DNA from: Lepidodermella squamata | Taxonomy: Eukaryota; Animalia; Gastrotricha | Assembly (NCBI GenBank): GCA_047495785.1 | Contig: JBLDXI010000021.1 | Coordinates: 558,001-622,000, forward strand | Direction of reading: 5' to 3' | DNA: 64,000 nt | Part shown: piece by piece, positions 7,358-53,000 of the stretch | Layout of the letters: each line of letters opens with the position of its first letter | Numbering within the stretch: the first letter of the stretch is position 1 | The notes under the pieces: generated by a model | Told to the model about the DNA's origin: nothing | The model's database searches: none | Seen by the model: only the letters and a program-made list of their open reading frames with translations | Position numbers and translations under genes: made by a program

Positions 7358-10300
7358 ATGATTGCCGCTGAAAATGGCGATGGTGAGCAAGATGGTGCGT
7401 ACGGAGATGGCGGTGCTTCGGCCTTGTTGCCGTGGAACAACGGCGGTGGGGACGCGTTTTCGGCCCCACCCCCGGCCCCGAACGCGGTCGTGAGTGGCTA
7501 CGTCAGTTTTGCTCAATTACTTGAATCTGCGGTGCATGGCATGTTTCAACATCTCCAAATTCTCGGCGACATCCTACCTCGAAAAACCGATAGCGAACGC
7601 AAAGTTGCAGTTGCCCAATTCGCGTTGAGAACTCGAATGTTATGCATTCGGCTGCTAGCCGTTCTCGACTGGGTCAGTTCAAACGGCCCGCGCGTCGACC
7701 GTTGTGCTCACATTGTGAACCTGCTGAGTAAACAAGGCGTTCAGCTGATTGACTGTGCCGATAAATTGGCCGAATTATCTCGCAATACACTGCCCTCAGT
7801 GTGCCTGCCTCCATTTTCCGTCTACCAAGCTGTTAGCGTTCTGGTCAATCCTATCGAAGGACTGCGGTTACCAACCTGCATCCGAGAACGTTTCACGTCG
7901 AAAAATCCGTTGACTGATGATGAGAAACTGTTTGTTGTAAGGCAGTTGAATCAACTGATCGAAACGAGACTGGTTTCGTGTGAAATACCTCCTAGACTCC
8001 TGAAGAATCTACGAGTTTCGGACGGTTGCTTACAACTGAAAGTTGACAGCGAATTCGAAGCTCGACTTACTTTGATGTCATTCGACCAAAACTGCCCGTG
8101 GCGTTTGTTAGATCTAGCAATTATCGTCAACGACCCAGGTGCAGCGGGTAGCGATGTAGCCCTGGTTCATCGCCGCCAGCTTGATCTCCTGTGCCAACTT
8201 GTTCAAAACCGACTGCTATCGGTAGAAGAAAGCGACCATTCGCAGCCGCTGGTTGTGTTGTATAACATGTTACATTCCTTCTGTCTTTCACTTCAACTCG
8301 AACTTCTCATCGATCATTCGAACCAGCTGGTTCGATCACGCTATTCGGAATCGATCGCAGTTTCGCGTCAATCGCAACGGACTTTGACGTTGACCTACTG
8401 GTCGGTTCCTATTCAAACCTCATCTTCAGCAGTTGGCTCGGCCCAGGCCACCCAAATCTTCACTCTAAGCGTTGTAGCCAGTGATGCTCGGCCTTATTTG
8501 TTGGTCGAACATGTCCCTGCTCTGCCAAACGCCCCGAAAGTGGTGAAGCCGTCTAAATTGAACATGTACTGGCTTCTTACGCAAACATTGCACTGCCGAG
8601 CGCAAAATATGCTCGACCGATTGATGGTATCAATCACTGCTGTAACGACCCCCGAAAGTCTTATCGGTGGCGGTGGGGCAGTTTCACTTGAACATTCGAT
8701 AACTAATGGAAATACATTGCGACCAATTCTTCGCCTGGATCTCGTCTCACCCAATGGTCCGACAGATCAAATTGTTGAGGTAGGTGCAGCTTAATTCATA
8801 TTTCTGACAAAAATTAAGTTGGGGTTTTTATTCTAGGTATCGCTGGACGCGAGGCGAGGGACATTGCGTTGCACAAACCCGATAATTCCACGACAAATCT
8901 TGTCTGACTTCGACTCAGCAATTCGACATTTCACGTTCCCGCAACCGCCATCCACTTCGGTGTCAACCCCGAGCATATTGCCGCAAATTTTCTCCACGAG
9001 TTTGTTCCAAGCGCGAACTGTGGTTATGTTGAGCCGGCTGCTATCCTCGGCTCGCCGGTTAGGACTATCAGCTCGCATAGCTAACCACCATTCTTTGACC
9101 CCAGCGATTTCGGATTCGGAGGAAAATACTGCGGAATCATCGACTCAACAGGCTCTATGGGTTCCTATTAGCATTCCATCAGTGCGGTTGTCATCCGCCT
9201 TTACTTGCTCACTCGAGTCTTCGAAGAGCGGGTTGGCCGATGTCTGCCTTCACCAGCTCGATACGCCGGGCGAAGGTGCTCAAGAGGCGAAGAATTCTGA
9301 CTGGTTTACGATAAACGATCGGCGGACGCCCACCGCTTCCGGCTACATGTGTTCGCGGTTGAATCTCGACGCAGTTTTAGCCACGACTTATGCCACGCTC
9401 GCCAACCCACCCTCGACTCATCAACACGGCTCGACTGATTTGATCCTCGCCCATCGTCAGTTGGTTGTTACGATGTCGTTCTGCCAACAACGGACAGCTC
9501 TTGCGAGTTTGGAGTTGTCGCTGAGAAAAATCGGGTTTCAAACAGCCGGAGTGTCAGTTGACTGGTCAACGGGTCAGCAGTCGCTCCTACTCACTGGGGT
9601 GGTCTCATCACCGTCTACCATGCTATCACGCGCTCTTGAAACGCGGCTCCTTCACTGTAAAGTCACCTGGGAGTTGCCTAGAAGTGAACGTTGGTTCATC
9701 AGTGCGATTTTGATCAGCACAATCCCCGTCCCGCCAGCTTCTTTGGCATCGCCTTCTAACTCGAACCAGACCTCAAAATCATCGATTTATTTCCCACTGT
9801 CGTTCCACCTCGACCCGGTAACTGGTGGGCAATTGTCGCCATCGGCTGTTTTCGATCGAACAGCCACCCTAATTTCGTATACTTTGGACTCGGCGGCTCA
9901 GTTATTGTCACTATTGGTGCCTCTTGACAACCCTGCTAAGCCTTCGCCGATTCAGTCTCTCGAAATACAATCGCAAAGAGCGAACGTAGCTTTGCGTTAC
10001 GGGCAAAATTACACCGTAACTGTCAGTGTCTCTCGGACCCCGGTTCCGATGGGATCAGGCTCATCAGCCGGTGCTGTCGTAGCGTGGCATTATTCCGTGA
10101 TATTCGGGCCCGGAAGTCCTCATGCTGCGCTTCGACAAATTTTTCACTCTTGGTTCTCCCGTACTCTTGATTTAGCTGGTCTTTTGCTCATCCTCGAAGA
10201 AACTGCATCAACGATGAGCTGTCTTCGTACGATCCTTTCTAACTCGACTCTTGTGCAATTGCCTCTTACGATGGATTCACGCCGTTTAGCGTCGTTTCTA

Positions 10301-11611
10301 GGCGGCAATAGTAACCAGCAATCCGGGGGTAATACTGCTGGAGGCATGTTAGTCCCGTCTGTTGCAATAATTCCTATGTCGCCCGTTCTTGTTCGACTGG
10401 TTTATCATGGCTGTCTTGCGTTCTCGATTCGACTTATGCCGAATAAATACGTTGAGTTGCAGCATTGCCCGAACGGCGTTCCAGCCTTCACGTTACCATC
10501 ACCCTCTCAGGACCCGAACCAAGCACCTCTGGACCCGTCTTTGACACCTAAAGCGCTCGCCCTACCCTCAGCGTATGTCACCAAAATTTTATCTGCCCTA
10601 TCTGCCGACTCATCTGCATGTACCATCTCACCGCATCGCCAAGCTGAGGAAGCGGCGAAAAGCGCGCAACTGGCGTCCAAGAATCCACTAGCGACTGTTC
10701 TCGCATCTGAGCGGTTCGAATGGGTGGTTTCAAGCGGTCGATTGGAGAGCATGCTAACCAACGCAATGGCTTTCTACTCGCTGGAAACGGCTCTTCACGA
10801 GCCGAATGCGCCGTCTACAATCGCTATGGGCACGCTGCCGTTCACTTCTAGAACAGCTGTAAATAGGGACGCTTCTAACTTGACAGAAACGCCGCCGTTG
10901 ATCCTCGTAAATCCAGTTGTGCAAGTAACGGTATCGCTCCATCTTAAAAACGCTGCTCATGATAAATCTGTGTTCAAAATCGCCTCATCTACCCCCGAAC
11001 CTGATTCGCTTGTCCCGCAAAGCCCTAGCGGCGGTTTGCCACCCCTGTACCCGTGCGATTGTCAGATTTTGGACGATTATTTGGCGCGAGATTGCGAAAT
11101 GTCGGTCGATTCTTCGTCAGCCGCATCGACAACTCGGCTGGTTTCTTTACTTCGAATTTTATCTCAGCCATTACCGATTATCCGCGACTTTTTGTCTCTG
11201 ATGGCACTGGCTTTGCAACCCGAGGCGAGTGCGTCTTGCCGCTTATGGTTCCCGCTAACGTTTGGCGCCGGCCGTTCGTCTGGCCAGTCCGCCAAAGCGC
11301 CGGTATCATGCCCTACCAGGACTCGGATAAATTTTACTGTGGAGCTATCGAGAAACCCCACGAATCAATCGAATCAGGCCACGCAAGCTCAACAAAATGG
11401 CCCGATCCGGTTGCAGGCGGTTTACGATCATTCGTCTTACGCGTTTACGGTCCATCTCAGCTCTGAGCAACAGCAGCCGCTGATTAATACGCCGGTCCTG
11501 GCCGACCAGCTTAACAGTCTGCTTCAACGCACGATGCAGCAAGCTTCGGTGAACCAGCAAACGCCGCTGTACCCTGTTTTAAGTGAAATCGCCGCTGATA
11601 TGAGACTGTAA
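7358..11611 (+). CDS. MED14: Mediator subunit 14
   Basis: N-terminal Med14 domain: LPRKTDSERK...FALRTRMLCIRLLAVLDW, ADKL, RLPTCIRE, EFEARLTLM...PWRLL, LHSFCLSLQLE. Intron 8780-8836 joins the two ORFs in frame. Confidence 0.9.
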
Positions 11612-45481: not shown

Positions 45482-47506
45482 ATGATTATTGAGATTGCAG
45501 TCATACTCTTGACCGCTTTCGATAGTAGCATATCGCAAATTGTCAGCAGCAATTTGGTCGCCGCCCCATGCAGCGCTTCCTTTGTTAATGATCCAACTCA
45601 GATTCGTCCACGGACGACTTACACATGGCTGATAAGACCTTTGAACAACAATCAGGTAACAATGACAACTCTTATTAATATACATCGGTGAATTTCACGT
45701 TATTCGACTACTACTTGCAAGAGAATTTTGGTCGCTCCTGAGTACTATGGAAACTTTTCTGTCAACTCTGTGAAATCTAGTAGGGCGATCAAAGTTTCTG
45801 GATCAAGCCGTGGTTTAAGCGCCTCATTCAGAACAGGTTCTTGCTATACCAGGAATTTTAAGCCAACTGCTGAAAAACCTGTTACTTACAGATGGAACTG
45901 GTCAGATTATATTTGATTGTGCCTCTCAATCTTTCGGAGTCTTTAGTGCCGCAAATATCAACGTTCCAAACTATCGTGTCCCCGGCAAATTACTAGCATA
46001 TGCTTGCGATGGCAATGCCTTGACTGGTACATACTAAAAATTAAGAAAATTATCGAAATATTACTGGTGTGATTAAGCTGGCGGACTGCTGGCGATGACG
46101 CAAGGTTCAGATCAGGCAATCATTGTGGAGTATGTCTTGAAAAATGCGGTCGCCAGCCCAAATCAGATTGCTCGCTTTGGTGTTACTGCTTGGTCTCTTG
46201 ACAATACGCCGATTCCAACGGTATACTTAAAATTTCATTCCGGAGTTGAAAAACTTGGCTCATTTCCAGACAACGACTAGAAGGGCTGCGACAACACAAA
46301 CAACAACGACAACCAGAACAACAACAACGACAAGGCCTTTGAATGTGGCAACACAGGCGCCAAGTTTGAAAAAATCTAGAATTTGGCCTTTGCATCCGAT
46401 TTTTCGTTTCCAAAAGATGATGGATGCATGGAAATTCAGACATCAGCTAGCGGGAGGGGACTATTCCGGAGGCGACAAACAAACGTTTTTAGACAGCGCA
46501 ATTCGCTCAACACGCAAGAGTACCCTTTCATAGTGCAGTTGCGGTACACATCACAGTCCGTACAAGGAGTTTGGCGACCGCGTGGCGGAAGGGACAGGAG
46601 GCAGATTGGACGGCGACCTTTCGGCCGCGATAGAGAACAACTAAGGAGATATGACTATCAATGTACTGGAGTTCTAGTCGATCCTTTCTGGGTAGTCACT
46701 GCCAAGCACTGTGTATTCCCGGGGAAAAAGTATTAAGCATAAACTATCAATTTTCGGCTGTTACTTGCGGTTTTTTATGTGTTGCAGTCGACCTAGCAAC
46801 TGGGTTGTAGTCACGGGGGCGACGTCAACAAATGACAATGCCGATGTGACCAATACTGACGTTGTAAGATTTAAATTGCCGCCTGCCTCCAGGTAAGATA
46901 AATTATTCCATATCTTTGAATGATTCACGTTTACCATATGAAATCTAAGGCGGAGAGATAACAATAACGCAGAGGCCGATATAGTGATGGTTCGCCTGGA
47001 AACGCCTCTAACCGACGTCCCCTACGTATGCTTGCCACCGTCTAACTGGCTGCCAGCTAACGGCAGCGATTGCTCAACTGCGGCATGGGAACAAGGCCTT
47101 AGCGGAAATGACGTGGAATTTGTTTCACGACAGCAGTGTTCGCAACGTGATTGGCTGAGAAATGTTGAAAATGACATGTTCTGCGCTTCTCAACCTCCAA
47201 ATACTTCATGCTTGGTAAAAATTGAATCGCTGTGTAATTTCAACTTTTTCCAATTTTAAACAGGATACAATGGCAGAAGCTATGTTTTGCCCTGCTGACG
47301 ATAAGCTTCGATTGACAGGGATAGCGTCGCGAGCCCAGAGACCATGTGGCCGTGAGTTGAACATATTATCACTTATAATTTTCCTGAAATGAACTTTATC
47401 TGCTGTAGGTCCGAGAAATCCTACCGTTTTCGTCAACATCCCATTTTACAGTTCGTGGATTGACAGCGTAACAAATACTGCAGAAGGCGACCGCGACGAT
47501 GATTAA
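45482..47506 (+). CDS. Secreted serine protease homolog, tandem paralog of 43123-45123, Ser motif lost
   Basis: Shares N-terminal motifs (EYYG, ACD, RF..TAW) and intron positions with the upstream gene. TAKHC and ADIVMV are kept; SCL|DTMAEAMFC replaces GDSGGP. Confidence 0.75.
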
Positions 47507-47940
47507 AAGTCGTCACGAAATGCCACATGAATTTCATACATTATATGCATCATCCGCGCCTTTCAAGTTAACAAGATAATTCACACTATGATTTTGCAAT
47601 ACATTGGACCTTGGATTTACTATTTTTGTTCCTGAAAAATTGAATAAACAATACTTGATAACATGGGCGATTAAATTGCGCACACAGTCATATGCAACAT
47701 AATCAATGTCGAATGCAAAAACGCGCGCTACGCCCTTTATGAATCATGATTCATCTTAAAAAAGAGAAGATGAATCATACGAATTTTCGGCTCACTGTAC
47801 ATAAATTAACTTGGGCTGTATGCGTGAGTAATTTTACGTCGTGCCAATTCCTTTTTTATATTTTGAATCAGCCAGCAAGTGAAATACCTGCTAAAAATAC
47901 AAGTCGATACTACAACAAAGAATTTAGTGGCTCATTTTTA

Positions 47941-48630
47941 ATGGCAACCGATGCGCAGTCAAAGAAACTATTGGATTTAAGGCATTACCTGAATTTGACG
48001 CTTCATGCGGCTAGTTGTCCCGGTGGGGATACCTGCAAGGTACCGTATTGTGGCCGCAGTCGACGAATCCAATACCATATATCTTCATCATCCTGTTCCG
48101 ATGACAACTGCAAAGGTGAGTTACCTAGGGCACTTCGGGTATTTCAATTTTAGATGAACATTGTTTTTGTAGTGAGCGGCTGCCTTCCAACGCGTCAAAT
48201 ACTACAACATTGGTGCCAGTGCCAGAAATCTGACTGTGAGCTGTGCTCGAGTGCCACATCATATCGGGAAAATGCTGAACTCAGAAATCAAATCTGCACC
48301 CCTATGTTGAATTCGCAACGCTGTCCTACAAATGGCAGGAATAATGGGAAAGACAGTGCCATCATGCAAAACGACAGGGGTTGTAAAGCAGTAATCATTG
48401 CTAAGCAGAGTGACGCTTTTGATACGTTTTCTATGCTATTACTTGATGTAAAAGCTGTAATACTAGCCGTATCACTTCTATCGGTATTGGCATTGCTATT
48501 GGTTCTATTGGGATGTTGTTTCTTATGTAACGGGAGCAACTGTCAAGTTCATTTCTTATATATGTGCGCTTTATGTGTGCTTCATAATTACAACGAATGC
48601 GCTCATCGAGTCGTGTCAAAGTTAATCTAA
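47941..48630 (+). CDS. Stand-alone TAZ zinc-finger protein with predicted TM segment, 210 aa, 2 exons
   Basis: Intron 48116-48172 joins LHAASC...CKVPYC...YHISSSSC...CK|VSGC..TRQIL.HWCQC...DCELC, giving three HCCC Zn sites. Hydrophobic AVILAVSLLSVLALLLVLLG at about 48454-48513. Confidence 0.75.
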
Positions 48631-49218
48631 TTTTTTTTACCTGGCTCTTGATGTAAATATATACAGAAGCATAGTAAGCGATAAATTCGACATATTAATC
48701 TGGGCTGAGGTCAAGCGTCATCTAAGTACTATCCAAGTTATTTCTTTGGAGAGGCTGTTACGCTAGATGGTTGAAGGACCTTCGACACTTACGGAAACAT
48801 ACATAATACAATGGAAAATGATTGAGGAACTAGCGATGCCTTTTTGGTATATTCGAAACTTGCGTAATACACCTCAATCAATCAAATTCCCGAATCAATC
48901 GATCTCAAATTTGTGGGAATTAATCGCACTACGCTGAATGCGACAACTTGATCGAACAATCGAGTGATTGTAGACATGATGGAGAGAATGAAAATAATAA
49001 AATTCAACTACTTGGCAGTGTTTCGTTTTATCTTCAGTCATTCTGCAGTTACCAAAAATATATGGTCTATAGCGTGCCCAAATCAGTCACGACTTCTCTC
49101 AGTCGAGATCAATTATTAAAGGGATGAGCGCTGAGTTAAAGTATAACGCGCTTTAGAGCCCGTGAATCACAATCATATTCCTGGGAACCGAAAAGTATTT
49201 AAACTAAGGTTCTATTTA

Positions 49219-49597
49219 CCGTACTGCCCCGAACAAAAACCGTGACATTTATTTTTTTCAAACGTTGATGAAACCCTGACATTTAAAAGGGACTGACATT
49301 TACTTCGGGCCTGACGTTTATTTATCCGAACCAACAAGTAACTGTCTAGGTAACCAAAATGGCATACATTTCCCTTAGATTCTATGTATTTTGACCCAAA
49401 AAAATTGGTCCCTGACCTTTCTAAGTACCAAGACTAGAAATTATATCCAATCAGAATGACTAAAATTACCTTATTAGTGATCTTCAGTATTATCCCCGCC
49501 ACTGACCTGACATTTATTTTTTCGAACGACCTCTAACCTCTGACATTTATTTGAGGCTGCCATTTATTCGAGGCTGACATTTTTTCGGGCAGTACGG
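49219..49597. mobile_element. MITE, Tc1/mariner-pogo-type non-autonomous element, 379 bp
   Basis: TIRs CCGTACTGCCC(C)GAA / TTCGGGCAGTACGG, flanked by TA on both sides. About 9 internal direct copies of a CTGACATTTA-like motif. Confidence 0.85.
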
Positions 49598-50036
49598 TAA
49601 TTTTCGCGATCGTAAACAATTGCACCACTTTTCATTAAATATTATATTCGGCATTTATACGTTTATATTTGAATAAAATGAACTTTATTTGAAACGAATT
49701 CGAATAAATTCGAAGTTCTGAAACCGCGTCTGGTTCGATAGAACATTTTCATAAAAATAAAATAAAAGATCCACGTCGATGAATGTTGCAAGGCGGCGAA
49801 AACATTGTTATTATTTAAGTAAAAAATAACCAGCCGCGTAGGAATTCTTTTTGCTTTGCTTCAACAAAATTGCGAAGCCGCGGGACAAAACACGAACTCA
49901 CATTTTACTCCCTTGTCCACTTATTTATTGATAAAGCAAATCAAAGTAGAAGACTGGTATGAATCTCACTTGTATTCAAGAAGAAAATAAGATAATGAAA
50001 TTAGCAAAAAATATCACAATTGGAATCAAAATAATC

Positions 50037-53000
50037 TCACAGTCGATATTCACTTGGTAGCCCAATCGAGGTTTTCGGGCGAGTTTTCCTGCCCGAGCTT
50101 TGCGATCGGTTGAAAGCTGTGCTAGGCCGGTTGACGTATGTCTGAGTAGTAGCCGGACGATTTCGGCTACCGCTCGGGTCAATATTAATAGCGGTGGCCG
50201 AAATTTGACGTGAATGTAACCGAGAGTGTAACCGCGAAGAAAACGGCCGAGTTTGCGAGAATCCGTTATCCTCGGCATTTTGCTGCCGCTGAAGCTGGCT
50301 GAACCAAACCGGCGGCATAGCTAACAACGTGTCTTTCATCAAAGACCGCAGCCATTTAACTGAATAATCTTCCTGGCCGCTTTCGAGCAGCGCTAAATCT
50401 GCTGCTTTTTGCAACAGATCAGCGGCTTCGCGTTTCGAGGCTGAGGTAGGGAGGTAGGAGAGATATCGCCCTAAACTCGCGCAGGCAAATGACAGACGCT
50501 CCGTGTCACCTCCAGCCGACAAACGGCGTTCTTCAAGGATTCCAATTGCCTCGCGGAAACATTGCTCAACCTCCTCGGAAATGAATAGCGTGTCGAAAAC
50601 TTGCTGAAGGCCTTCAGCAGCCGTCGACGGCCGACTCGAGCGGATCGAGTAAGCCGAACGGGCTCGCTCTGGTTTCGGGGTGGTGGCTCGAGAGGCTAAA
50701 ATGCAACCCAGGGCCAGGAGGGTGTCCGCTACAGCTGGGTGCTTACGACCGTACCATTTGGTCGAGGCATCGGCTGCAGCCCTCAAAAACCTCTCGCATT
50801 GCTCAGCATTTGTAGAGGATTGCCTGAAAGGTTGGTCCAGTGTAAAAATCAAAACGGAATAGATTCCTAAAACCTACGAGAAGAGGCTTAGGCAAAACAA
50901 GTGGCGAAAAACGATGGGTGGCCAGGAGGCGTTGCCATTCATTTGTAGGAAAGGATCGACAGATTCGATGGCTTGACGAGCTGCCTCGTAATCATTGACT
51001 TTGAAACACATCTCGCACGATTCAAGCTGAGCGACAACTAAAACGAAACATCCAAATTTTTCTAAGGCCAGCTTAATTCTGATGGACTTACTGTAGGAAT
51101 ATCTCACTTGTTTGTGAAATTTTTCGACGGGATGCGAATCAACTTTCTCCATCAAATTGCTCAGCTCATTGATAGTTTCCGCAGTTTTTGCGATTTCTTC
51201 GATATTTGCCCGGGCGCGGTTGCTCAAATTTTGCTCGACATCGAGGAAAATTTTCGCCGCGTATTGCATGGTTTCCAGGGCCAGTTTTATGTTGTTGAAG
51301 CGAGGAGCGGAAAAGCGAGCAGAACACCGCATTAGGAACCCGCCTAGCCTCGCATGAGCTTCACAATCAAACGGCACCTCGGCTAATATCTATATTATAG
51401 AAAATTGAAACAAGCCATGAAAAAGGGAGAAAACTGAATTTTACATTTTCGCAAAATCTTGCAACAATTGGAATCAAGTTGACGAATAGACTGACGTTGA
51501 CCTGATAATCTGAATCTGTTGGTGAAATCTTGGTTATCGCGAAAAGCCAATCGCAGATCAGCCACGAAAAATCACTGCGGTTGACTTGTCCGTCAGGTAG
51601 GCTGACTGAGTCATCCTCTCCCTCTTCTGTAATAGTGGTTTGTTCGCTTCGAGCGCGAGACGACGCCCTTTCGCTTCTTGACGGCGTTCGATCGCTGCGT
51701 CGAGACGAAACAATCTCACTACGATCTGTTGAATCCCCGAGGACATTTTCGCTCAGAACGCCTAGTTTGTTCAGCCAACGAGCGACCAAATACCGGAACA
51801 GGCCATTTGAGTTGCTCTCTATTCGCAGTAAAATTGACAAAGCTAGAACTTGGCTGTTCGCCCCATTTGCAAGCCTTGTAAACGATCTAAAAAATGAACC
51901 AATAAACTCTGTGGAATCCGAATTAAATAAATAATTCTCACTCTCCATTGCTGAGTAGTTTGACCAAGCCAGGCCAGTCGTCACATTGATCAGCTTGCAT
52001 GATTTGTTCATCGATAACAACCGAATCCCGAGAAGAGTTTGGTAAACTCTGCAAGAACCTAACGTATCGCCTCCTCCACACAGAAAACGAGTTTGCGTTA
52101 GAATCTAAATGAGCAAAAAATTGTTGGTTAGCTAAATTTAAGGAGCTGAATTTTTACCGAATAAAACTGTTGCTAAGCCGCGTCTGACACTTTCCGAAAC
52201 GAGCTTCAACGTGTTTCTGGAGCCGGCTCGGAATAGATAGCTGGCAGATTGCCAGAAACTGCACCATCGTTCGACAACCTTTTGATTTTGGCTCGGTTTT
52301 TTTATTGCCATCACTAAACGAAGCATTGGCATGATCGAGCGAGTCGGCAGGCCATAGCGCGACAAAACCATGAAACGAAGAAAAACAGGAATCCAAGACA
52401 CATTGCGATCTGGCTCCTCGGTTGTAGTCGATGTGGCGGCTGGAACTAGATGATTCGAGTGCCCCGTCCATTTTCGCAACTCATGCGAGAGCAAATCTCG
52501 CAGGCGAGTGAGTTCTAAAACGCATTCGACTTGATACTCGAGCCTGTGTAACATGTCTTGGTTAGCGAGGATTCGACCAATAGCCGCCAGGTGAATCGCA
52601 CTACCCGCAGCTGGTGACGCGAGAATGGTCGATACGAGATGGCGCGGGAATTTAGAAAAAGCCACCGTTTCTTTTCGAAGGAATGTTTCTTTGAAAACGT
52701 GATCCTGCGCCAGGCTAGCAACGTCCATGACTTCCACGTCGTTTCTTTTGAGCAAAACTTTCAATGTCATGTCATTAGCAGTAGTTGTAACAATTATGCG
52801 ACACTGCGGCGGCAGCTTTTCGGGTAACCAATGCAGCTGCTTCACTTTAACCTCGGCTCCAGATCCGAAATAGCGACCACATGAAACAAAATCAAGGCCC
52901 ATGATGACCAGTAAACACGGTCCCAACGCTAAGGAAGCGCCGAATTCTTGCTCAATTTGATGCAACTGTCGAGCTTCAAGCGCCTCTAGAATTCGGCCCT

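What the first reader, a model, noticed from the sequence alone, without database searches (positions are those of the whole stretch)
47941..48630. Stand-alone CBP/p300 TAZ1-like finger fused to a predicted transmembrane anchor
Seen: a 210-aa protein with all three HCCC zinc sites and TAZ1-like context (L.LHA..C, P.C, RQI..HW..C...DC..C), a linker, a 20-residue hydrophobic helix and then GCCFLC. There is no signal peptide and no HAT, bromo or KIX domain. Established: in animals TAZ domains occur essentially within nuclear CBP/p300, and TAZ1 binds the activation domains of HIF-1alpha, CITED2, RelA and STAT2. Inference: a membrane-tethered cytosolic decoy or proteolytically released competitor for CBP-dependent transcription factors. 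This is the best candidate here for an undescribed regulatory system.
Basis: partly seen in the sequence, partly recalled or inferred. Interest (0 to 1): 0.75.

Follow-up and report, generated by a model that had tools for sequence, protein, structure and literature searches.

The report
Membrane-anchored stand-alone TAZ zinc-finger protein
An unidentified small invertebrate expresses a two-exon gene for a 210-residue protein that joins a complete copy of the CBP/p300 transcription-factor docking domain (TAZ) to a single C-terminal membrane helix; I found this layout described nowhere, and its function is untested.

Summary
RNA contigs from two studies define a monocistronic mRNA. Its cDNA 5' end is at 47909 and the first ATG at 47941. 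A 57-nt GT..AG intron spans 48116-48172, the stop is at 48628-48630, AATAAA lies at 48996-49001, and the poly(A) tail starts at about 49016.

The 210-aa product has all twelve TAZ zinc ligands. Both exon halves hit TAZ independently, and the third site matches only solved TAZ1 structures. The first loop is short, however, so the domain is a compact TAZ rather than a textbook TAZ1. Residues 153-176 form a very hydrophobic helix, followed by a 34-residue Cys/His-rich tail. There is no signal peptide and no HAT, bromo, KIX or RING domain.

A second, diverged expressed copy keeps every ligand in exon 1 (dN/dS about 0.3). No orthologue was found in any search. The syntenic spot in the nearest available relative lacks the gene. 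This organism's proteome is not in the libraries, so absence elsewhere is weak evidence.

Best reading: a lineage-restricted, tail-anchor-like membrane protein with a cytosolic TAZ domain that docks activation domains at a membrane. That function is inference only. Earlier notes of this scan report TAZ1-KIX-RING genes elsewhere in the same genome.

The parts
47909..47940 (+). 5' UTR. The cDNA 5' end is at 47909 and there is no upstream ATG in the mRNA.
   Evidence: table 7: a cDNA adaptor-like loose end lies directly before 47909 in X1. Records 2, 3 and 19 start at 47908/47909. Sequence read.
47941..48115 (+). Coding exon 1 (58 codons plus 1 base): helix 1, zinc site 1 and most of zinc site 2 of the TAZ domain.
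48116..48172 (+). Intron: 57 nt, GT..AG, phase 1, with an in-frame TAG at 48151-48153.
   Evidence: table 5: a joint skipping 57 nt is seen in 2 contigs of X1 and 1 of X3. The DNA run X2 reads straight through.
48173..48630 (+). Coding exon 2, ending with stop TAA at 48628-48630.
   Evidence: Colinear RNA contigs cover 48188-48872 (X3) and 48373-49015 (X1).
47962..48255 (+). TAZ zinc-finger domain, about residues 8-86, interrupted by the intron. It has three HCCC sites.
48256..48453 (+). Linker, residues 87-152. No family match; it diverges quickly in the second copy.
   Evidence: (the second copy stops aligning after 48297).
48454..48525 (+). Predicted transmembrane helix, residues 153-176.
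   Evidence: Kyte-Doolittle 19-residue mean of 3.12.
48526..48627 (+). C-terminal tail of 34 residues, rich in Cys and His, beginning inside the GCCFLC motif. It does not have RING spacing.
48631..49016 (+). 3' UTR, with AATAAA at 48996-49001 and the poly(A) tail added at about 49015-49016.
   Evidence: table 7 (poly(A) loose ends in X1 and X3).

Best explanation
This is a real, expressed, lineage-restricted two-exon gene. It encodes a single-pass membrane protein of the tail-anchor type. A complete, compact TAZ zinc-bundle domain (about residues 8-86) forms the N-terminus and most likely faces the cytosol. A linker of about 65 residues with no family match follows. One very hydrophobic helix (residues 153-176) then anchors the protein in a membrane of the secretory pathway, leaving a 34-residue Cys/His-rich tail on the far side. 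TAZ domains in CBP/p300 are docking sites for disordered activation domains, and this protein has no catalytic or DNA-binding part. The most likely mechanism is therefore capture of activation-domain-bearing partners at a membrane: sequestration away from the nuclear coactivator, or presentation to membrane-side machinery. Shown here: the gene model, expression, TAZ domain identity, the hydrophobic helix in frame, and the lack of other domains. Inferred: topology, zinc binding, the partners and the regulatory outcome.
For: It shows GT..AG joints in X1 and X3, a cDNA 5' end at 47909, poly(A) tails at about 49016, colinear exon 2 contigs, and two RNA studies. TAZ identity rests; all 12 ligands align end to end with a Pfam-positive TAZ domain of P0001. 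No other domain or hidden frame was found. A second expressed copy differs at 9 of 58 residues in exon 1 but keeps every ligand, with dN/dS about 0.32. That argues the domain is under constraint. The helix ends 34 residues from the C-terminus. From general knowledge of tail-anchored proteins, such a helix leaves the ribosome only around termination, which favours an N-terminus-in-cytosol topology. Zinc-thiolate folds of this kind are cytosolic or nuclear. Earlier notes of this scan report other redeployments of TAZ and KIX in this genome (not checked here).
Against: No binding, localisation or topology data exist. The flanking charges do not favour N-in: the N flank is about -1 net and the C flank about 0. 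A CCxxC motif right after a TM helix is typical of cytosolic palmitoylation sites, which would fit the opposite orientation. No orthologue was found. The gene is absent from the syntenic position in the only relative available, so long-term conservation of the TM fusion is unproven. I could not see whether the second copy keeps the TM helix. The spliced protein could not be folded or submitted to Pfam because it has no reference.
Confidence: 0.45

Rival explanations
1. This is a young, evolutionarily transient duplicate of a TAZ-coding exon pair. Its source would be the organism's CBP gene or its TAZ1-KIX-RING family. The 3' part would be new sequence that happens to encode a hydrophobic stretch. 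The gene would then be transcribed but have no selected membrane-tethering function.
For: No relatives were found in 1.84 billion representatives beyond two distant double-TAZ proteins, nor in the word searches or the JGI metagenome scans. The gene is absent next to the conserved TPR/HEAT/AGPS block of the relative. The linker diverges fast between the two copies. The gene region has the lowest GC in the window (0.384), and T-rich sequence readily encodes hydrophobic residues.
Against: Both copies are expressed and keep all exon 1 ligands, with dN/dS about 0.32. The transcript is defined and polyadenylated, with its own AATAAA. The ORF is intact. The helix is long and exceptionally hydrophobic rather than marginal.
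Confidence: 0.25
2. The topology is reversed (type III, N-terminus outside). The Cys/His-rich N-terminal domain would be luminal or extracellular and disulfide-bonded. The CCxxC cluster would be a cytosolic palmitoylation site, so the protein would have nothing to do with transcription factors.
For: One search shows no positive-inside bias on the N flank, a long Leu-rich helix, and a juxtamembrane CCxxC directly after the helix. From my own knowledge, that motif resembles the palmitoylated clusters of synaptotagmin-type proteins.
Against: There is no signal peptide. A foldable N-terminal domain of 152 residues is hard to translocate. The helix lies too close to the C-terminus for co-translational signal-anchor insertion. 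The ligand pattern is exactly that of an intracellular zinc domain.
Confidence: 0.1
3. The protein is a membrane-bound substrate receptor. It would work with the TAZ1-KIX-RING-H2 ligases of this genome, or with other ligases, to degrade activators at the ER, rather than acting as a passive decoy.
For: Earlier notes report a family of TAZ1-KIX-RING-H2 genes and a TAZ insert in BIRC6 in the same genome (not verified here). From general knowledge, plant BTB-TAZ proteins link a TAZ domain to CUL3 ligases.
Against: This gene has no RING, BTB or other ligase-recruiting element. I had no sequence to compare with the RING family.
Confidence: 0.15

Closest known systems
TAZ1 (CH1) domain of CBP/p300
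   Same: Both have three HCCC zinc sites. The third site has the TAZ1-specific spacing (H-x3-C-x4-C-x2-C) and the RQIxxHW context. The only PDB hits for that segment are TAZ1 structures: 1l8c, 1r8u, 1u2n, 7qgs, 1l3e and 5hou.
   Different: The first loop is 5 residues, against 12 in TAZ1 (the TAZ1 figure is from my own knowledge). Site 2 has H-x5-C. The domain stands alone, without HAT, bromo, KIX or ZZ, and is fused to a membrane helix.
Small stand-alone TAZ proteins: P0001 (marine eukaryote metatranscriptome) and P0002 (Logan contig), plus Atlas clusters of 66-106 aa TAZ-only proteins
   Same: P0001's second TAZ domain has nearly the same compact ligand spacing (site 2 has H-x3-C, against H-x5-C here) and aligns end to end with residues 10-98. 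These proteins are small and lack a HAT domain.
   Different: P0001 and P0002 carry two TAZ domains and no hydrophobic helix. Identity to them is only 36-41%.
TAZ1-KIX-RING-H2 gene family noted elsewhere in this genome by this scan
   Same: The same organism redeploys a CBP-type TAZ domain outside CBP.
   Different: This gene has no KIX and no RING in any frame; it has a TM helix instead. No sequence comparison was possible.
Plant BTB-TAZ (BT) proteins
   Same: A TAZ domain is used outside a histone acetyltransferase as a protein-docking module (general knowledge; the papers listed).
   Different: This gene has no BTB domain and no calmodulin-binding part. It comes from a different kingdom, and the plant proteins are soluble.
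Tail-anchored membrane proteins
   Same: There is no signal peptide, a single very hydrophobic helix near the C-terminus, and a large N-terminal domain.
   Different: The tail beyond the helix is 34 residues, at the upper limit of the usual definition. No known tail-anchored protein that I am aware of carries a TAZ domain.

Membership tests
TAZ zinc finger (Pfam PF02135) | Three consecutive HCCC zinc sites | tested here: met
   H22/C26/C32/C37, H46/C52/C57/C62 and H71/C75/C80/C83. All align with the ligands of a Pfam-positive TAZ domain of P0001.
TAZ zinc finger (Pfam PF02135) | Profile match above the curated threshold | tested here: inconclusive
   Exon 1 alone scores 24.2 bits against a cutoff of 25. 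The spliced protein has no reference, so it could not be sent to Pfam. A local HMM of four Pfam-positive TAZ domains gives 41.6 bits, against 14.8 for the best of 2000 shuffles.
TAZ zinc finger (Pfam PF02135) | Four-helix bundle fold that binds three zinc ions | not testable with these tools
TAZ1 subtype of CBP/p300 | Site 3 spacing H-x3-C-x4-C-x2-C with the RQIxxHW context | tested here: met
   only TAZ1 chains are hit, with 12 of 23 residues identical.
TAZ1 subtype of CBP/p300 | Long first loop (H-x3-C-x12-C-x4-C) | tested here: not met
   The loop here is 5 residues. Exon 1 aligns best in register with TAZ2 site 1. The TAZ1 spacing is from my own knowledge.
CBP/p300 (KAT3) coactivators | HAT/KAT11 domain with bromodomain, KIX and ZZ | tested here: not met
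   Pfam finds nothing in exon 2, no other frame carries such domains, and the mRNA is only about 1.05 kb.
Tail-anchored membrane proteins | No signal peptide and a single TM helix close to the C-terminus | tested here: met
   helix at residues 153-176 of 210, with no N-terminal hydrophobic stretch.
Tail-anchored membrane proteins | Post-translational insertion with the N-terminus in the cytosol | not testable with these tools
   This needs a topology and insertion assay. The 34-residue tail is borderline for the class.
TAZ1-KIX-RING-H2 family of this genome | KIX domain and C-terminal RING-H2 | tested here: not met
   The tail Cys/His spacing does not fit a RING.
Plant BTB-TAZ proteins | N-terminal BTB/POZ domain | tested here: not met
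   no BTB domain.

The most novel reading that the evidence does not exclude
This animal lineage has taken the activator-docking domains of CBP/p300 out of the nucleus and attached them to different effectors: RING ligases, BIRC6 and, here, a membrane anchor. The TAZ-TM protein would then be a membrane-bound trap that controls how much of a stress or immune transcription factor can reach the nuclear coactivator. That would be a regulatory principle not described for TAZ domains.
Probability: 0.3. Interest if true: 0.7.

Novelty: new variant of a known kind. Interest (0 to 1): 0.55.

Why it matters
TAZ domains are the main landing pads for activation domains on CBP/p300. Natural proteins that carry one on a membrane anchor would show that coactivator docking modules can be reused as cytoplasmic traps or receptors. 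Such a protein would also be a ready-made, minimal tool for tethering activation domains to membranes. Taken with the TAZ1-KIX-RING genes noted elsewhere in this genome, it would point to a lineage-wide redeployment of CBP modules that could be tested with simple binding and localisation experiments.

Tried and rejected
1. Word-index searches found nothing, with exon 2 or with exon 1 inside a longer ORF.
2. The Atlas feature search gave no usable hit with exon 2. With exon 1 it returned only TAZ clusters.
3. Exhaustive phmmer with exon 1 gave two distant double-TAZ proteins and one spurious cytochrome b5 repeat protein. There was no self-hit, so this organism is not in the library.
4. Two JGI metagenome scans found nothing.
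5. Exact look-ups of the exon 2 ORF and of the neighbouring AGPS gene found nothing on record.
6. The AGPS homologue P0004 (77% identity) led to syntenic metagenome contigs of a relative, L001-L006. tblastn with the spliced protein found only a chance-level 24-residue match (E 4.4), and reading the region showed no TAZ motif.
7. I looked for a decayed KIX or RING in the other frames of the 3' part and found none.
8. I tested whether a transposon carries the gene. The only element is a MITE downstream of the poly(A) site, and it does not enclose the gene.
9. Rfam found nothing in the window, and the organism could not be named.
10. Literature searches for TAZ with a transmembrane segment gave no relevant paper.
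11. Structure prediction and a Pfam scan of the whole spliced protein were left out. The spliced sequence has no reference, and the intron contains a stop.

Full report
**What is in the sequence**

The region 47941-48630 on the + strand holds two open reading frames in the same frame, separated by a stop. The sequence shows a GT at 48116 and an AG ending at 48172. Joining 47941-48115 to 48173-48630 gives a 633-nt coding sequence and a 210-residue protein. The intron is 57 nt, phase 1, and carries an in-frame TAG. The product therefore cannot be read through by reference. All analyses of the whole spliced protein were done only in scripts, from the window file.

**Is the gene model real?**

Contigs of three public runs were laid on 46000-51500.

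- X2 behaves as DNA: it reads straight through all introns.
- X1 and X3 behave as RNA, although their records do not say so. They show GT..AG joints in the upstream protease gene, CT..AC joints in the downstream minus-strand gene, and poly(A) loose ends.
- For this gene, the 57-nt joint is present in two contigs of X1 and one of X3.
- Contigs begin at 47908/47909. In X1 the loose letters before that place look like the end of a template-switch cDNA adaptor (recognised from my own knowledge), so 47909 is probably the true mRNA 5' end.
- No ATG lies between 47909 and 47941.
- Exon 2 is colinear with the genome from 48188 to 48872 (X3) and from 48373 to 49015 (X1), with no further joint.
- Poly(A) starts at about 49016, 15-20 nt after AATAAA at 48996-49001.
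- The upstream protease gene has its own stop and AATAAA before 47655.

This is therefore an independent transcript of about 1.05 kb. No spliced-leader sequence was seen on it.

**Is it a TAZ domain?**

- Ligands: H22/C26/C32/C37, H46/C52/C57/C62 and H71/C75/C80/C83.
- Exon 1 alone gives Pfam zf-TAZ at 24.2 bits, just under the 25-bit cutoff. It gives weak hits to both TAZ2 and TAZ1 structures.
- The first 32 residues of exon 2 were searched separately. They hit only TAZ1 structures of CBP/p300 (E 0.0025-0.017), with 12 of 23 residues identical across the third zinc site.
- Two halves that each point to the same family, joined by a confirmed intron, are strong evidence.
- An exhaustive phmmer search with exon 1 returned two small proteins (P0001, P0002). 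Pfam calls each a double TAZ, at 87 and 55 bits.
- Residues 10-98 of the spliced protein align end to end with the second TAZ domain of P0001, ligand for ligand.
- An HMM built from those four domains scores the spliced N-terminus at 41.6 bits. The best of 2000 shuffles scored 14.8.
- The Atlas feature search also puts exon 1 among TAZ clusters.

On subtype: site 3 has TAZ1 spacing, but the first loop is short. 'Compact TAZ with a TAZ1-type third site' is more accurate than 'TAZ1'.

**The rest of the protein**

- Residues 87-152 have no family match.
- Residues 153-176 form a very hydrophobic Leu-rich helix, with a Kyte-Doolittle mean of 3.12 over 19 residues.
- The last 34 residues hold six Cys and three His. 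Their spacing does not fit a RING.
- The other frames of the 3' part hold nothing.
- The N-terminus has no hydrophobic stretch, so there is no signal peptide.

**Relatives**

- A second, diverged copy is expressed. One X1 contig covers 47908-48113 with 23 differences. One X3 contig covers 48188-48297 with 10 differences and then stops aligning; its loose letters still translate to a related but diverged linker.
- With the 19 coding differences that the table lists, exon 1 of that copy changes 9 of 58 residues and keeps every ligand. dN/dS is about 0.32. Three differences were not listed, so this is approximate.
- Whether it is a paralogue or a very divergent haplotype cannot be told. Whether it keeps the helix is also unknown.
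- Outside this organism, nothing closer than P0001/P0002 was found.
- The query did not find itself in the big library, so this organism is not represented there. Absence of relatives is therefore weak evidence.
- The neighbouring AGPS gene led to metagenome contigs of a relative (77% protein identity). These contigs share the TPR/HEAT/AGPS gene order.
- Next to the TPR gene that relative carries tandem small secreted proline- and cysteine-rich genes. It has no TAZ gene there.
- The gene is therefore either young, or mobile within the genome, or lost in that relative.

**How it most likely works**

Shown: an expressed protein made of a TAZ docking domain, a linker, one membrane helix and a short Cys-rich tail.

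Inferred: the helix ends 34 residues before the C-terminus and no signal peptide exists. Insertion should therefore be post-translational, with the TAZ domain left in the cytosol, which is also where zinc-thiolate folds of this kind function. In CBP/p300 the domain binds disordered activation domains. A membrane-held copy would capture such partners away from the nucleus, or hand them to membrane-side machinery.

Rivals:
- a transient duplicate with a fortuitous hydrophobic extension;
- the opposite topology, with a palmitoylated CCxxC on the cytosolic side;
- a receptor role for a ubiquitin ligase.

**Comparison with known systems and novelty**

This is a member of the TAZ domain family. It is not a CBP/p300, not a plant BTB-TAZ protein, and not one of this genome's TAZ1-KIX-RING genes. 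I found no description of a TAZ domain joined to a transmembrane helix. Stand-alone TAZ proteins do exist, so the new element is the membrane anchor and the animal context. Earlier notes of this scan report several other redeployments of CBP modules in the same genome. I did not verify them, but they make a lineage-wide pattern plausible.

**Verdict**

This is a new variant of a known kind, of moderate interest.

Noticed in passing
window 49216-49600: A MITE-like element of about 385 nt with 21-nt terminal inverted repeats and internal TGACATTTA repeats. Its contig depth in the DNA run X2 is 20-50 times that of the flanks, so it is a high-copy repeat. It lies just downstream of the TAZ-TM poly(A) site and does not enclose the gene.
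   Followed up: partly
window 47908-48297 (second copy seen only in runs X1 and X3): A diverged, expressed second copy of the TAZ-TM gene, about 89-91% identical in the TAZ part, with a linker that diverges further. It was not seen in the DNA run X2 at 90% likeness. X2 depth over 47434-49302 is about 72-82, against 105-145 in the flanks, which may mean a haplotype-specific region.
   Followed up: partly
L001 47-328, 808-1062, 1472-1717, 2202-2516: The relative's contig carries a tandem family of small proteins (81-104 aa) with a signal-peptide-like start, a run of 8-9 prolines and conserved cysteines. They sit where this window has the TAZ-TM gene.
   Followed up: no
window 46000-47505 (+): A trypsin-like serine protease gene with at least five introns of 49-58 nt, all confirmed by RNA joints, ending about 400 nt upstream of the TAZ-TM transcription start.
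   Followed up: partly
P0001, P0002, L007: Small stand-alone proteins with two TAZ domains and nothing else. One comes from a marine eukaryote metatranscriptome and one from a Logan contig. Organism and function are unknown.
   Followed up: partly
window 46818-46832, 49982-50031, 50523-50583: Clusters of half-depth variants in the DNA run X2, which point to a highly heterozygous genome.
   Followed up: no
window 7358-11611 (+): MED14 is split over two long ORFs (Med14 N-terminal domain, then Med14_C). This is probably one gene with a short intron.
   Followed up: no
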